This document shows positions 4,810 to 39,925 of a DNA stretch of 40,176 bases, one piece after another. Where the stretch lies: positions 168,021,681 to 168,061,856 of the forward strand of contig NC_068982.1 in the NCBI RefSeq assembly GCF_001194135.2, given 5' to 3'. Position 1 is the first letter of the stretch, and every line of letters begins with the position of its first letter. A program made the position numbers and the translations under genes. The notes under the pieces are model-generated. The model was given only the letters and a program-made list of their open reading frames with translations, searched no databases and had not been told where the DNA came from. Source of the stretch: Octopus bimaculoides. Taxonomy: Eukaryota.

Positions 4810-5480
4810 CTCTGACTCTTTGTCACTTTCTCTCTAACTTTCGCGCGCACCAATCGTTAAGTTAGTCTCTTGGAGAGCAGTACATAACACGATTACACAC
4901 ACACACACACACAAATAGCTATTCTTCTTTTCTTTTTTACATTATTCCTCCCTTTCATAGTTAACTATAAATATTATAATTATAATTAATATTTCCATTC
5001 TGGATAATCTTCATTTTTTTTTCTATTGACTTCCTCATAAGGCTGAAAATTATGTGCAATTCTTTATGTGTTTTCTGTGTTATAGAACTCTCTTTCTCTT
5101 CCTTACTAACTGAATCGCTCTCTCACACACTCATACTCCTCTCTCTCACTCTGCCTCTCTTTCATTCTCCCTATCTCACTCCCCCTCTCTTTCTCAAGCA
5201 TCAGATTTGATTTTACTCGAAAACAAGTCGTAATGGTTTTTTCTTTCTAACATCATTTCTCCCTTCATAATTAACTATAAATATTATAATAATTATTCAT
5301 ATTTCCCACATTAATGTTTCCTTTATTTTGTTAACTGTCTTGCCCCTCATTTAAACCCTTGTGCGATTGGTTATCTAAATCTCTATCTGCTTTATAAACT
5401 CTCTGACCCACTGCCATCATTTTCCCCCTCACGCTCACATATTAGCACACACAAACACAGACATATACATTTCTCTTTCT

Positions 5481-5632
5481 CTCCCTCTCCCTGCATCTCC
5501 CTCTCCCTGCATCTCCCTCTCCCTGCATCTCCCTCTCCCTGCATCTCCCTCTCCCTGCATCTCCCTCTCCCTGCATCTCCCTCTCCCTGCATCTCCCTCT
5601 CCCTGCATCTCCCTCTCCCTGCATCTCCCTCT
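5481..5632. repeat. 16-bp minisatellite (CTCCCTCTCCCTGCAT) x ~9.5, essentially perfect
   Basis: GCAT recurs at exact 16-bp spacing: 5493, 5509, 5525, 5541, 5557, 5573, 5589, 5605, 5621. Confidence 0.97.
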
Positions 5633-6577: not shown

Positions 6578-6600
6578 NNNNNNNNNNNNNNNNNGTGTGT
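6499..6600. repeat. Compound (TA)n(TG)n microsatellite with assembly gap
   Basis: Direct reading; N run 6578-6594. Confidence 0.95.
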
Positions 6601-15935: not shown

Positions 15936-16939
15936 GAACGACCTATATACCTATAAGATAAACAGAATAAAACACACAACCTCATAGCATTCTGGAGAGA
16001 TTAAAAATGTTATGTAACCAAAAACCTATTGCTTTTTACATACATACTCTACCAATATATANNNNNNNNNNNNNNNNNNNNNNNNNNNNNNNNNNNNNNN
16101 NNNNNNNNNNNNNNNNNNNNNNNNNNNNNNNNNNNNNNNNNNNNNNNNNNNNNNNNNNNNNNNNNNNNNNNNNNNNNNNNNNNNNNNNNNNNNNATATAT
16201 ATATATATACACTTTCCACAGACACACAAACACACAAATATACTACATTGCTCTTCAATGTATTTCAATAAATTGTTAGTCAACAGTGCATATAGAGACA
16301 GATTTAAACATCTTGTATTTATCTTAATACAGAACCTCTCTGGATGGAATAATGAGTTTATAGCATTATTGCTGCAAACAGTTAAATATGTTACTCACTC
16401 ACTGTTGAACTTGCGATTGAGAAATGAATGTAATCCAGCTAAATTAAATACGACGGTCAGTTGTTAACAGTGTTCCATATAATTCTTTATTCGATGTGTA
16501 TGAGTTCAACTTATACAGTGTTTCCTAAAATCTTGGATGTATCCTATGGTGTATTGTAGCAGCAAAATAAACACGGGAAAATATATTAATCAGCACAAGA
16601 GAGCTGAAAGAGAAATAAAAGATGGGGGCTAAATTCGAAATTGTTTGCAGCGTAAATCATACAGAAAAGCTTAATTAACGAAAGGTGAAAAAATATGACA
16701 GAATGAGGAGATAATCTCCTCGACTTTAATCATCCATCTTCTAAACATGTATAAAACGTACCAAATATTGTGCAAGATTCACAAAGACTTTGTTGGTTCG
16801 AACGAGCCTCCTTCATTTGAACTATACTCCAACATCTACAGATCCTAAGGAATCACTTTTGTGTTCTTGTGTTGACTGCTCAGAAAATGGATGACATCAT
16901 TTATTAATAAAAGATTCAAGACTCACTTCAGTTATCAAA

Positions 16940-28410: not shown

Positions 28411-28449
<39 letters not shown>

Positions 28450-28589: not shown

Positions 28590-28590
<1 letters not shown>
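28450..28590 (+). mobile_element. 5'-truncated SINE between two (ATT)n tracts
   Basis: Starts ggttcaaatttcgccgaggtcgac, ends ccagtagaaagg; (ATT)n at 28412-28448 and 28589-28656. Confidence 0.88.
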
Positions 28591-28657
<67 letters not shown>

Positions 28658-31607: not shown

Positions 31608-31644
<37 letters not shown>

Positions 31645-36214: not shown

Positions 36215-36767
36215 TTATTGAATTGATAGTGTATTGCGTAGGATGTGGGTTGTTCCTATCAGGGCTATGTTGTGGATAGTGTGTTGTGTTCTGAATCCAG
36301 GTATGGCGTATACGTTTTTGTTTATATGTTTGTTACCATGCTCAATGTTCCAGTTATTTCTGGTATTGTTTTCCCCTTCATACTCCACATCTTCAATACT
36401 TCAATTTCGAGGTCTTTGTAATTTGACAATATCTCCACTTCTTTTTGGAAAATATTTTGGTCAGAAGCGGCTGCAATTTCTATCAGTAAGCAGGAGTTTT
36501 TTTTCCAATCCTTGATTATTATGTCTGGGAGATTAGCTTTGATTTCTTTGTCATTTTGAACAGGCATATCCCAGATGATTGTGGCCTGGTTGTTGTCTTG
36601 TACTTTGTTTTGAACATGTTTATACCATTTATTGTCAGCTTTTATATTGTAGCTTTGGCATATTGTCCTAGTGGATACAACTACTTACTCGGTCGTGTCT
36701 GTATATATANNNNNNNNNNNNNNNNNNNNNNNNNNNNNNNNNNNNNNNNNNNNNNNNNNNNNNNNNN

Positions 36768-36801
<34 letters not shown>

Positions 36802-37255
36802 CAAATTTGGTTAGAACTGGACAGTCATAGATAATGGGGTCAACTGTCTCATTGTACTGGTTGCACATTCTGCATTTGGTGTTGGGACCTGTTTTCATTA
36901 TTTTGCTTTTATCCGTAATCAGACATTGGTCTTGTGCAGTGAGAATTAGTTGTTCCGTTTCAGCTTTTAGTCCAGAGTTTCGAGTCATTTTTGCTTTTAC
37001 TTAGGCTCACGTTTTCTCATTGGCCAGGGAGTGATTTTTGTCTCCATTTCTTCTTTACTATGTTTTGTAATTGTTTTCATGTTATTTTTTGTCTCTTTGA
37101 CTATTTCTTCTATTTTGTCATCTGAGGTCAGTGTATCAGTGTCGTTTGTTTCTGTCGTCTCTTCGTGTATAGTGAGACGTGTTTTCTTTTTCTCGTGTTG
37201 CTTAATTACATGTAGTAGTCTTCCATTTTTGTTTCTAAGTACTTTTCTAGCCAAA
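36215..37255 (-). mobile_element. R4/Dong-clade non-LTR retrotransposon, 5'-truncated decayed copy A
   Basis: LEKYL..LLHVIKQHE, GLKAETEQLILTAQDQ, CRMCNQYNETVDPIIYDCPVL, RHDRV, MPVQNDKEIKANLPDIIIKD..CLLIEIA, KEVE..YKDLEIEV, ends IALIGTTHILRNTLSIQ* (TAA at 36215-36217). Confidence 0.9.
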
Positions 37256-39844
37256 CACGAAACTGAAGCAGAGTGGTTAAAGATACTCAAAGAGGAGAGT
37301 GGAGAGTATCAGCAAGATGATTTGCGAATAATCGGGTAGATGATTAAAGATCAGTGCAGGAAAATTCCTAACTAGTAAGCATCTGGCCCAAATGAGATTC
37401 AGGGCTTTTGGCTTGAAATCTTGACAGCTCTGCACAAGAGAATTGCAAGACAGCTGGACGAAATACTGAGTAGTAACATCTAAGTACCGGCCTGGATGAC
37501 AAAAGGAAGGGCCCAAGTAATGGGAATGCGGTTAGAAATTTTCGACCAATATCCCTAACCTAACCCTAACCCTAACCCTAACCCTAACCCTAACCCTAAC
37601 CCAAGTAATGGGAATGCGGTTAGAAATTTTCGACCAATATCTAGTTTGATACTGATGTGGAAACTGATGACAGGCATCATATCAAGCAGCATGTATAATT
37701 ACCTCGATGAGAATGATCTACTGCTAGTCTAAGAAAAGTGTGTAGGCGTAAGAGCAGAGGAACGAAGGATCAATTACTAATCGATGAGACAGACTATCGT
37801 GGCTGATTGCAAGAAGAGACAAAAAATTTGGCGATCGCATGAGTAGACTACAGAAAAACATATGACATGGTACCACACTCATGGACTATTGAGTGGACCA
37901 TTGCTTTAAACGGGACTATTGCTTTAAACTGCTTAAGGTCTCATACAATATCCTGAAGTTAATACAAAACTCAATGGCAACGTGGCGAACTGAACTCACA
38001 GCATGGAGAGATAAGCTGGGAGACGTAAATATCGAAAAGGAATCTTTCAACAGAACAGTCTATCGCCTCTCCTATTTGTTGCTTGCATGCTGTCACTAAC
38101 GAACGTTTTAAGAAAGATGTGTGTGGGGTACATGCTACGCTAAGACTGAGAAAGAAATTGAGAGTTTGACTGAAACTGTGCAGAAGATTAGCAAAGATAT
38201 TGGCATGGAATTTCGGGTCGAGAAATTTTGTGTAATGTTTCTCAAAAGGGGGAAATCAGTAAAAGCCATGGGAACAACCTGTAAAGTGGTGAAACTATAA
38301 AGGAAATTGGAGAGGAAGGATATAAGTAGTTGGGTATCATTGACAGAGATAAGATGAATGAACACGAGATGGAAGAAATGTATAGGAAATAGTATTTGAG
38401 AACTCGGCTTGTGCTCCAATCGAAGCTAAACGGTCGCTATAAGATTAGAGCAATTAACACGCGGGATGTTACTTTGATGAGATATGGGCAGGAATAGTAT
38501 CTTGGAAGAATCATGAATTACAAGAGATAGACAGGAGAACACGTAAATTAATGACAATAAACAAGGAACTACACCCCAAGAGTGATGTGTCACGATTTAT
38601 GTAAAGAGGAATGAAGGAGGACGCGGATTAGTGTGTTGTGAAGGTTGTGTAAGGGAAGAGGAGAACAGCCTGGCTTGGTATGTCAAGGGGAGTAAAGAAG
38701 AAATGATTGAATCAGTGAAAATTCAGGTAAACTTAAAAGTGAACGAAGCCGTAGATCCAACACAATCTAAGAAAGACCAGAAAGAGCAGTTGAAGAAAAT
38801 TTGGCAGGACAAGAAAATGCACAGTCAGTTCTTGAAGAATGAAGATGAGATTGATTGGAATAGAACCTGTCAATGGCTAAGAAAAGAGACTTAAAGGAGA
38901 CCACAGAAATATTATTGAGCAGCGCTCAAGAACAAGTTCTGAGATCAAAGTACTCCAAATATCACATTGTTAAAAGCACTGACACGCCACAGCGTAGAAT
39001 GTGCTCTGAAAAGGGAGAAAGTATAAACCATATTGTTTNNNNNNNNNNNNNNNNNNNNNNNNNNNNNNNNNNNNNNNNNNNNNNNNNNNNNNNNNNNNNN
39101 NNNNNNNNNNNNNNNNNNNNNNNNNNNNNNNNNNNNNNNNNNNNNNNNNNNNNNNNNNNNNNNNNNNNNNNNNNNNNNNNNNNNNNNNNNNNNNNNNNNN
39201 NNNNNNNNNNNNNNNNNNNNNNNNNNNNNNNNNNNNNNNNNNNNNNNNNNNNNNNNNNNNNNNNNNNNNNNNNNNNNNNNNNNNNNNNNNNNNNCCACTG
39301 ACTGCTGTGCGGTAAAGCAAACATCGAGAGAGCCGAACAGTGCTATGAACACAAGCCAGAGGGAGTAATGGAAAACGAACATTACAAGATACACTGGGAT
39401 TTTAACATGCAGTGCGACCAATTCATAGAGGCAAGACGACCAGATATCGTGCTCAACCACAAAAATGAAAACGAAGTAAAGATATTAGACGTTGCAATAC
39501 TAGGCGATTCGAGGGTGAAATGTAAGGAAACAGAAAAGATTGAGAAATACCAGCCACTGCGGGTGAGATAGAAAAGTAGTTATGGGGCATGATGAAAGTA
39601 ATGGTAATACCGGTGGTAATTGGAGCATTAGGAGCAGTTTCCAAGGGCTTTGAAAAACATATTAAGAATACTGGAGCTGCTGTCAACTCGCATTCTAAGG
39701 AGAATATTGTCTCTTTGAGTCATAGGAGAAGGCACTACTTGAAAGCTTTGATGATTTTTTGTCGCCTGTTTTCAAGTAAAGAATAACCGGTAATTAAGAA
39801 CTATCTGGGAGTCTTTCATAATAGATGATGGCGATGATGATGAT

Positions 39845-39847: not shown

Positions 39848-39925
<78 letters not shown>
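39830..39925 (+). repeat. (GAT)n then (AAT)n tail at the 3' end of R4/Dong copy C
   Basis: Direct reading; Dong-type elements are known to be associated with TAA microsatellites. Confidence 0.9.

What the first reader, a model, noticed from the sequence alone, without database searches (positions are those of the whole stretch)
37512..37641. Telomeric (CCCTAA)n tract with a perfect 42-bp target duplication inside an R4/Dong reverse transcriptase region
Seen: cccaagtaatgggaatgcggttagaaattttcgaccaatatc occurs identically at 37512-37553 and 37600-37641. The 46 bp between the copies are pure telomeric-type repeat, with microhomology at both junctions (C left, CCC right). The duplicated target is RT coding sequence ([15 protein letters not shown]) and itself contains an opposite-strand GGTTAG. 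Both copies are identical while the host element is heavily decayed, so the event looks recent. Known: molluscan telomeres are TTAGGG, and short interstitial telomeric sequences with flanking duplications are interpreted in mammals as telomerase-assisted double-strand-break repair. Inference: either telomerase healing of a staggered break in a cephalopod, or retrotransposition of telomeric RNA or a telomere-tailed element by a non-LTR RT with an unusually long TSD.
Basis: partly seen in the sequence, partly recalled or inferred. Interest (0 to 1): 0.8.

Follow-up and report, generated by a model that had tools for sequence, protein, structure and literature searches.

The report
Telomere-repeat patch inside a dead retrotransposon
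A 46-bp run of telomere repeats, flanked by an exact 42-bp duplication of the surrounding sequence, really exists in this animal's genome and looks like the scar of a broken chromosome that was patched with telomere repeats, a kind of scar already well described in mammals.

Summary
An identical 42-mer lies at 37512-37553 and 37600-37641, and the 46 bp between the copies read CCTAA CCTAA (CCCTAA)6. Raw Illumina reads from three animals cross both junctions, and two reads span the whole structure, so it is not an assembly artefact. Junction contigs occur in five further samples from three other studies. It is not a feature of the transposon family: other copies and intact protein relatives are continuous across the site. 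The host is a 5'-truncated, frameshifted non-LTR element with an RT, a C-terminal restriction-like endonuclease and a (TAA)n tail, which fits R4/Dong. On the G-rich strand the duplicated target ends ...CTTGGG-3', three bases in register with the added TTAGGG repeats. That is the signature reported for mammalian short interstitial telomeric sequences made during double-strand-break repair, where 4.5-16% of loci also carry a flanking duplication. The best reading is a one-step germline repair insertion, probably primed by telomerase. Retrotranscription of telomeric RNA by another RT cannot be excluded. "Recent" holds only relative to the host element. An empty allele is suggested in one sample but not proven. 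This is a new member of a known kind, of modest interest.

The parts
37512..37553 (.). Left copy of the duplicated 42-bp target (RT coding sequence, [14 protein letters not shown]). Its last base, C, is in register with the tract.
   Evidence: Raw reads run from the flank through this copy into the tract. Run X1 carries a T>G SNP at 37540 in this copy only.
37554..37599 (-). Inserted telomeric tract. On the - strand it reads (TTAGGG)6 TTAGG TTAGG. The two shortened units lie at the end far from the GGG primer end.
   Evidence: The full 46 nt are read inside two single X15 reads. The (CCCTAA)n words are enormously abundant in this organism's genomic runs, with summed word depth about 1e6-1e7 against about 30 for unique sequence.
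37600..37641 (.). Right copy of the duplicated 42-bp target. On the - strand it ends ...ACTTGGG-3' directly before the first TTAGGG, giving 3 nt in register.
   Evidence: Raw reads run from the tract through this copy into the downstream flank in X13, X14 and X15.
37232..39684 (+). Host: a 5'-truncated, decayed non-LTR retrotransposon ORF with an RT and a C-terminal CCHC + RPD..D..K restriction-like endonuclease. It matches residues ~364-1106 of ~1130-aa relatives, has about 10 frameshifts and many stops, and is interrupted by an N gap at 39039-39294.
   Evidence: (RVT_1, E=2e-12).
39850..39925 (+). Perfect (TAA)25 array about 165 bp after the end of the host ORF; probably the element's 3' tail or target microsatellite.
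   Evidence: 100% matches; position relative to the ORF end. The assignment to the element is an inference.
37507..37511 (.). Scar of a 19-bp deletion relative to the family consensus: ...AAAGGAAG[AACGGTACTATGCCAGAAG]GACCCAAG, with GAAG microhomology. It lies 2-3 bp left of the duplication edge and causes a frameshift.
   Evidence: Loose-end consensus of 13-22 family contigs per run, and the frame change at 37504-37512. Whether it belongs to the same event is unknown; the chance of such adjacency is about 0.06.

Best explanation
This is a short interstitial telomeric sequence created in one step in the germ line, when a break inside an already dead LINE copy was repaired. The two strands were cut, or nicked and unwound, 42 bp apart. 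The 3' end of the bottom strand, ...ACTTGGG-3', paired through its GGG with the telomerase RNA template and was extended by about eight TTAGGG units. The extended end was then joined to the other end with a single base of overlap (G/C). Fill-in of the 42-nt single-stranded stretches left the target duplicated on both sides of the tract. What is shown: the structure is real, it is specific to this locus, it is younger than its host element, it has 3 nt in register, and it is widespread in the population. What is inferred: the break geometry, the order of the steps, and that the polymerase was telomerase.
For: Real structure: raw reads cross both junctions, and two reads span everything. Junction contigs occur in X1, X5, X8, X9 and X12, from five more samples. 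One-step local insertion: intact relatives read ...DPxKGNAVxNFRPISCLPLMWKL... without interruption. At 82% stringency family copies give depths of thousands up to 37509, yet the tract bins hold only this locus's contig. No expanding proto-repeat: the target contributes only C and CCC at the two edges. In-register GGG at the 3' end of the G-strand side has a chance expectation of 1.6%. In mouse, rat, human, chimpanzee and horse, 33-40% of informative ITS loci show >=3 nt in register, against <=1.56% expected, which was taken as the mark of telomerase priming (PMC2246262; PMC7215372). Flanking duplication is a recognised class of modification at such insertions: 4.6% of rodent, 16% of primate and 4.5% of horse loci, interpreted there as staggered breaks. 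TTAGGG-type repeats are extremely abundant in this organism's reads, consistent with it being its telomere repeat.
Against: Nothing here identifies the polymerase. No telomerase-RNA-derived sequence accompanies the tract, and that is the strongest telomerase evidence in rodents. A 3-nt overlap could equally be an end-joining microhomology at the far end of a cDNA primed from the other strand. Duplication lengths in the mammalian cases were not retrieved, so whether 42 bp is unusually long is unknown. No verified empty allele or orthologous empty locus was obtained; the 'ancestral' state is inferred from family copies and protein relatives. A 19-bp deletion 2-3 bp from the duplication edge hints that the event may have been more complex than a simple staggered cut.
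Confidence: 0.6

Rival explanations
1. Retrotranscription of a telomeric-repeat RNA by a retroelement reverse transcriptase (LINE or Penelope-like) at staggered nicks. The RNA could be a TERRA-like UUAGGG transcript, a C-rich telomeric transcript, or the repeat tail of an extremely 5'-truncated element. The process resembles target-primed reverse transcription. In one version the top strand end ...CCAATATC-3' primes on UUAGGG RNA, and the GGG overlap at the other end is the usual 5'-junction microhomology.
For: A clean target-site duplication flanking a tail-only insert is the classic outcome of TPRT. The genome is rich in LINEs that use simple-repeat tails: the host has a (TAA)25 tail, and several related fragments lie in the window. 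The two irregular units (CCTAA CCTAA) sit exactly where such a cDNA would start. The mammalian authors themselves keep retrotranscribed telomeric RNA as an alternative (PMC7215372).
Against: There is no element body at all. Only 1 nt of overlap exists at the putative priming end, against 3 nt at the G-strand end. Contigs that abut telomeric repeats genome-wide show no consistent adjoining sequence, with loose-end agreement of 0.4-0.76 and mostly degenerate telomere variants. That is weak evidence against an abundant element with a telomeric tail. Telomere-associated Penelope-like elements carry reverse-complement telomeric repeats together with an element body and ribozyme (PMC8557442), and none is seen here.
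Confidence: 0.2
2. A complex repair event without telomerase: either capture of a telomeric DNA fragment, or template switching during polymerase-theta or break-induced repair. It would have copied telomeric DNA and then re-copied the 42 bp, and the same event would have produced the neighbouring 19-bp deletion.
For: A 19-bp microhomology-flanked (GAAG) deletion lies 2-3 bp from the left edge of the duplication, with a chance adjacency of about 0.06. In horse, 29% of ITS insertions came with complex modifications, including combined deletion, addition and duplication (PMC7215372). Capture of telomeric fragments was one of the original proposals (PMC2246262).
Against: The host copy has about 10 other frameshifting indels, so one lying nearby is not remarkable. 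The junctions are otherwise clean, with no filler bases. Fragment capture does not predict the in-register GGG.
Confidence: 0.13
3. Assembly artefact. Two contigs overlapping by k-1 = 42 bp were left unmerged in a gapped short-read scaffold, and the gap was wrongly filled with high-copy telomere repeat.
For: The window is a scaffolded assembly with four N gaps. The number 42 equals k-1 for k=43. Several Logan contigs (X2, X3, X4, X6) join the flank, one 42-mer and the downstream flank without any tract.
Against: Raw 150-nt reads from three animals sequenced in 2026 contain the junctions, and two reads contain the entire 42+46+42 structure. Junction contigs appear in independent studies from 2015, 2022 and 2025. 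The 'empty' contigs are uninformative. Logan's k of 31 is shorter than the 42-bp repeat, and two runs of the same 2015 sample give different walks (X2 versus X8).
Confidence: 0.01
4. An inherited feature of the transposon family, or two separate events (a tandem duplication first, then a tract landing exactly at its joint).
For: None specific.
Against: Family copies and protein relatives are continuous across the site. Two independent events coinciding to the base is unparsimonious.
Confidence: 0.02

Closest known systems
Short interstitial telomeric sequences (short ITSs) inserted at double-strand-break sites in primates, rodents and horse (Nergadze et al. 2004/2007, PMC2246262; Santagostino et al. 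2020, PMC7215372)
   Same: A few exact telomeric hexamers appear suddenly at an internal site, often inside a repetitive element. The flank modification is of the 'duplication' class. [quoted passage not shown] The tract is a few dozen bp long. Some horse loci are presence/absence polymorphic, as may be the case here.
   Different: No paper on this mechanism in molluscs turned up. The ancestral state is inferred from family copies rather than from an orthologous empty locus. No telomerase-RNA fragment accompanies the tract. The duplication is 42 bp, and I could not retrieve the published lengths for comparison.
Chromosome healing / de novo telomere addition by telomerase at broken ends
   Same: Priming on a 3' end with 1-5 nt of complementarity to the telomerase template (cited in PMC2246262).
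   Different: Here the extended end was rejoined to the other side of the break, so the result is an internal tract rather than a new chromosome end.
Target-primed reverse transcription by non-LTR retrotransposons, including tail-only or severely 5'-truncated insertions and class 1 templated sequence insertions
   Same: A perfect target-site duplication flanks a simple-repeat insert, with microhomology at the junctions.
   Different: There is no element body and no known element with a TTAGGG tail in this genome. The stronger overlap lies at the G-strand end.
Endonuclease-deficient Penelope-like elements (Athena, Coprina) that attach to telomeric overhangs
   Same: A reverse transcriptase related to telomerase works with short telomeric-repeat stretches (PMC8557442).
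   Different: Those are whole elements with ribozyme motifs found at chromosome ends. Here there is only a 46-bp tract at an internal site.

Membership tests
Short ITS inserted during double-strand-break repair | Short run of (near-)exact telomeric hexamers at a non-terminal site, in a single orientation | tested here: met
   The tract is 46 bp, about 8 units, all in one orientation, and is the only such tract in the 40 kb. Unique flanks lie on both sides within single reads.
Short ITS inserted during double-strand-break repair | Appears in one step relative to the ancestral sequence, not by expansion of pre-existing units | tested here: met
   The ancestral state was taken from the repeat family, as Nergadze et al. 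did for ITSs inside repeats. Relatives and family copies are continuous across the site and have no telomere-like units there.
Short ITS inserted during double-strand-break repair | An orthologous or allelic empty site exists | tested here: inconclusive
   Contigs of sample S3 (X3, X4) show only the flank, one 42-mer and the downstream flank, and their depths fit a single 42-mer copy. However, k=31 cannot diagnose an empty allele. The raw reads (3 animals) showed only filled reads.
Short ITS inserted during double-strand-break repair | End-joining-type modification of the flanks (none, deletion, addition or duplication) | tested here: met
   There is an exact 42-bp direct duplication. This class is documented in 4.5-16% of mammalian loci.
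Short ITS inserted during double-strand-break repair | [quoted passage not shown] | tested here: met
   The sequence reads ...CTTGGG-3' followed by TTAGGG, giving 3 nt in register, with a chance expectation of 1.6%. This is a single locus, so it is suggestive only.
Short ITS inserted during double-strand-break repair | Telomerase RNA-derived sequence beside the tract (TERC-ITS subclass) | not testable with these tools
   The tract abuts the duplicated target directly, so there is no room for extra sequence. The organism's telomerase RNA is not available.
Retrotransposon (TPRT) insertion | Element-derived sequence between the target-site duplications | tested here: not met
   The 46 bp between the duplications are entirely telomeric repeat.
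Retrotransposon (TPRT) insertion | Other genomic copies sharing the same 3' tail and body | tested here: inconclusive
   Contigs abutting telomeric repeats show no consistent adjoining sequence (loose ends). Only the best-supported rows were visible, and no genome scan was possible.
R4/Dong-type (restriction-like-endonuclease) non-LTR retrotransposon (host element) | Reverse transcriptase domain | tested here: met
   RVT_1 matched at E=2e-12 and 47.7 bits against a cut-off of 29.6. The homology search returned 575 homologues.
R4/Dong-type (restriction-like-endonuclease) non-LTR retrotransposon (host element) | C-terminal CCHC motif and PD..D..K-type endonuclease after the RT, with no N-terminal AP endonuclease | tested here: met
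   The relatives' consensus reads ...CRMCGxKGExVxHIVSEC...ARRPDIV...IIDIAIPGDxRV..KExEKIEKYQ. The window copy keeps RRMCSEKGESINHIV and ARRPDIVLN...LDVAILGDSRVKCKETEKIEKYQ. The relatives' only Pfam domain is RVT_1, occasionally with zf-RVT. The motifs were read by eye, not scored with a model.
R4/Dong-type (restriction-like-endonuclease) non-LTR retrotransposon (host element) | (TAA)n at the 3' end or target (Dong) | tested here: met
   A perfect (TAA)25 lies at 39850-39925, downstream of the ORF end at about 39684.
R4/Dong-type (restriction-like-endonuclease) non-LTR retrotransposon (host element) | Phylogenetic placement with reference R4 and Dong RTs | not tested
Assembly artefact (unmerged k-1 overlap with bad gap fill) | No single raw read contains both copies and the tract | tested here: not met
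   Two X15 reads contain 42-mer + 46 nt + 42-mer + flank.

The most novel reading that the evidence does not exclude
The tract may be a segregating presence/absence insertion in a non-vertebrate. One sample appears to be homozygous empty, several look heterozygous, and others are filled. It may also have arisen in a single complex repair event that produced the adjacent 19-bp deletion. If so, it would be the first population-level, PCR-testable example outside vertebrates of telomerase, or a telomerase-like RT, patching an internal chromosome break. It would also provide a template for a genome-wide survey of this repair pathway in a repeat-rich invertebrate genome.
Probability: 0.3. Interest if true: 0.45.

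Novelty: new member of a known kind. Interest (0 to 1): 0.3.

Why it matters
It would extend to an invertebrate the idea that telomerase, or retrotranscribed telomeric RNA, occasionally patches internal chromosome breaks. That idea rests so far on primates, rodents and horse. Because the insertion sits in a repeat whose consensus gives the pre-break sequence, the break geometry can be read directly: a 42-nt stagger with a GGG 3' end. If the site is polymorphic, it is a simple PCR marker. By itself, however, a single locus neither proves telomerase involvement nor changes what is known about the mechanism.

Tried and rejected
1. Logan contigs as evidence for an empty allele. Several runs give a flank/42-mer/downstream contig with 0 mismatches. 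I rejected this as proof for two reasons. Logan's k of 31 is shorter than the 42-bp repeat, so an empty allele has no diagnostic word. Also, two runs of the same 2015 sample give different walks (X2 'empty', X8 flank-42mer-telomere).
2. Census of runs holding junction-specific words. Only 3 words were sampled, one of them pure telomere repeat shared with unrelated organisms, and the second query had too few words. This was uninformative.
3. Depth modelling of contigs to call genotypes. It suggests S3 is empty and that X5, X8 and X9 lie between heterozygous and homozygous filled, but mean word depths are too coarse to rely on.
4. Literature search for short-ITS insertion mechanisms in cephalopods or molluscs. 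It returned only cytogenetic and assembly papers. A search on R4/Dong features failed on a term-length rule and was not repeated.
5. The opposite-strand GGTTAG inside the target as a mechanistic clue. I rejected it, since such a hexamer is expected by chance in about 8% of 42-mers.
6. Naming the organism.
7. Laying all reads on the whole 37300-37900 stretch. The joint and loose-end tables were swamped by telomere contigs. I solved this by laying on each junction with only 12-13 nt of tract.

Full report
**1. The observation**

The 42-mer CCCAAGTAATGGGAATGCGGTTAGAAATTTTCGACCAATATC occurs at 37512-37553 and 37600-37641 with no mismatch. It occurs nowhere else in the window even with 3 mismatches allowed, and 100 shuffles gave no match. 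The 46 bp between the copies read CCTAA CCTAA (CCCTAA)6. This is the only telomeric-type tract in the 40 kb. The last base of the left copy (C) and the first three bases of the right copy (CCC) are in register with the repeat.

On the minus strand the structure reads ...ACTTGGG | (TTAGGG)6 TTAGG TTAGG | GATATTGG....

**2. Is it an assembly artefact?**

This was a serious rival. The window is a gapped scaffold with N runs at 6578-6594, 16062-16194, 36710-36767 and 39039-39294. Also, 42 equals k-1 for k=43.

Twelve public genomic runs of the same organism, coded 'organism A', hold the locus, and three further runs from 2026 are kept as raw reads. The raw reads settle the question:
- At the right junction, X13 (3 reads) and X14 (2 reads) run continuously from the tract through the second 42-mer into the unique downstream flank.
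- Two X15 reads contain the first 42-mer, all 46 nt of tract, the second 42-mer and the downstream flank.
- At the left junction, one X13 read and the same two X15 reads plus one more run from the left flank or first 42-mer into the tract.

Junction-spanning contigs are also present in X1, X5, X8, X9 and X12. In total the filled form is seen in at least eight samples from four studies dated 2015 to 2026. The structure is real.

**3. Is there an empty allele?**

Several runs (X2, X3, X4, X6) yield a contig that joins the left flank, one 42-mer and the downstream flank with no mismatch. I do not accept this as proof. Those contigs come from a k=31 graph, and the repeat is 42 bp, so an empty allele contains no 31-mer that a filled allele lacks. 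Two runs of the same 2015 sample also give different walks: X2 'empty', and X8 flank-42mer-telomere.

The depth arithmetic gives hints only:
- Sample S3 (X3, X4) fits a single-copy 42-mer.
- X5, X8 and X9 fall between the heterozygous and homozygous-filled expectations.
- No empty-type read appeared among the seven informative right-junction raw reads. That has a probability of 0.008 if all three animals were heterozygous.

Run X1 carries a T>G change at 37540 in the left copy only, so the two copies have begun to diverge in at least one haplotype. A presence/absence polymorphism is plausible but unproven.

**4. The host element and the pre-insertion sequence**

With the 88 bp removed, the surrounding sequence translates, through stops and frameshifts, into a reverse transcriptase (RVT_1, E=2e-12). 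Its relatives are single ORFs of about 1130 aa that cover 95-98% of the stitched 729-aa query.

tblastn places residues ~364-1106 of the best relative on 37232-39684, plus strand, with about ten frame changes. The copy is therefore 5'-truncated and long dead.

After the RT, the relatives carry a CCHC motif and an RRPDIV...D...K motif, and the window copy retains both. A perfect (TAA)25 follows the ORF at 39850-39925. I made no phylogeny.

Across the insertion site the relatives read ...[38 protein letters not shown]... without interruption. When genomic contigs are laid at 82% identity, family copies give depths in the thousands up to 37509. The tract bins contain only this locus's own contig (12.5, 27.3 and 68.4 in X1, X8 and X9). 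The tract and the duplication are therefore a local event, not a family feature.

**5. A neighbouring scar**

The family consensus after 37509 is AACGGTACTATGCCAGAAGGACCCAAGTAA (13-22 contigs per run, agreement about 0.9). This copy thus lacks 19 bp (AACGGTACTATGCCAGAAG) between two GAAG motifs, and the deletion ends 2-3 bp from the left edge of the duplication. With about ten indels in 2.4 kb, the chance of such adjacency is about 0.06. It may be coincidence, or it may mark a more complex repair event. I cannot tell which.

**6. Age**

Zero differences in 42 bp bound the divergence between the two copies at 6.9% (95% limit). Other family copies differ from this one by 7-13 positions in 80, and the host has many frameshifts. 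The insertion is therefore clearly younger than the host copy. It is not demonstrably recent in absolute terms, since it is widespread in the population.

**7. Mechanism**

The structure matches, feature for feature, the short interstitial telomeric sequences that Nergadze, Giulotto and colleagues showed to be inserted in one step at double-strand breaks in primates, rodents and horse. Their findings include:
- Flank modifications include a 'duplication' class, at 4.6% of rodent, 16% of primate and 4.5% of horse loci. They attribute this class to staggered breaks (PMC2246262; PMC7215372).
[quoted passage not shown] They read this as telomerase priming.

Here the G-strand end of the duplicated target is ...CTTGGG-3', followed by TTAGGG, which is three bases in register. 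The most likely course has four steps:
1. The two strands are opened 42 bp apart.
2. The ...TTGGG-3' end is extended by telomerase.
3. The extended end is joined to the other side with one base of overlap.
4. Fill-in produces the duplication.

The break geometry and the enzyme are inferred, not shown.

The main rival is reverse transcription of telomeric-repeat RNA by a retroelement RT at staggered nicks. It also predicts a clean duplication, and it places the two irregular units at the start of cDNA synthesis. Three points argue against it:
- There is no element body.
- The priming end would have only one base of overlap.
- Contigs adjoining telomeric repeats show no common neighbouring sequence.

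A template-switching or fragment-capture event that also made the 19-bp deletion is a third possibility.

**8. Minor points**

The GGTTAG inside the target is expected by chance in about 8% of 42-mers. TTAGGG-type words are enormously abundant in this organism's genomic runs, consistent with TTAGGG being its telomeric repeat. The organism's identity is coded, so 'cephalopod' could not be checked. No paper on this repair pathway in molluscs was found.

**9. Verdict**

This is a real, locus-specific short interstitial telomeric insertion with a 42-bp target duplication and a GGG in-register end, inside a dead R4/Dong-like LINE. It is a new member of a known kind. The interest is modest: a clean example outside vertebrates, possibly polymorphic, and a good seed for a genome-wide survey.

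Noticed in passing
window 37507-37511: This LINE copy lacks 19 bp (AACGGTACTATGCCAGAAG, between two GAAG motifs) that 13-22 other family contigs per run carry. The deletion ends 2-3 bp from the left edge of the 42-bp duplication and shifts the reading frame.
   Followed up: partly
window 37540: In run X1 the left 42-mer copy carries G instead of T, on a contig of depth 12.5 that continues into the tract. The T form (depth 18) also leaves the left flank. This is either a heterozygous SNP in a filled allele or a marker separating filled and empty alleles.
   Followed up: partly
window 37895-37929: There is an 18-bp tandem duplication (GGACCATTGCTTTAAAC / GGACTATTGCTTTAAAC, 94% alike) inside the RT coding region of the same host element. 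It is another small local duplication, with no insert.
   Followed up: no
window 36979-36298, 35833-35398 and 30879-30655 (minus strand): Three further decayed fragments match the C-terminal (endonuclease) part of the same LINE superfamily (27-44% identity to P0001 residues ~880-1100). The region is a pile-up of 5'-truncated copies.
   Followed up: partly
window 39850-39925; also 28412-28449, 28590-28656, 31608-31644: There are perfect (TAA)25 and three perfect (ATT)12-22 arrays. The first follows the host element's 3' end, as expected for a TAA-tailed or TAA-targeting LINE. The others have no recognised element beside them.
   Followed up: no
window 5480-5632: A 16-bp unit (TCTCCCTCTCCCTGCA) is repeated 9.6 times with 100% identity. 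This is an unusually perfect minisatellite for a region that is otherwise full of decayed repeats.
   Followed up: no
window 6578-6594, 16062-16194, 36710-36767, 39039-39294: Four N gaps of different lengths show this to be a scaffolded short-read assembly. The last gap removes part of the host element's zinc-finger/endonuclease region.
   Followed up: yes
window 37475, 37643, 37649: At these positions almost all other family copies carry a different base (A>G, A>T, A>C in more than 95% of the laid depth). They are private substitutions of this copy and are useful as locus-specific markers for PCR or read assignment.
   Followed up: no
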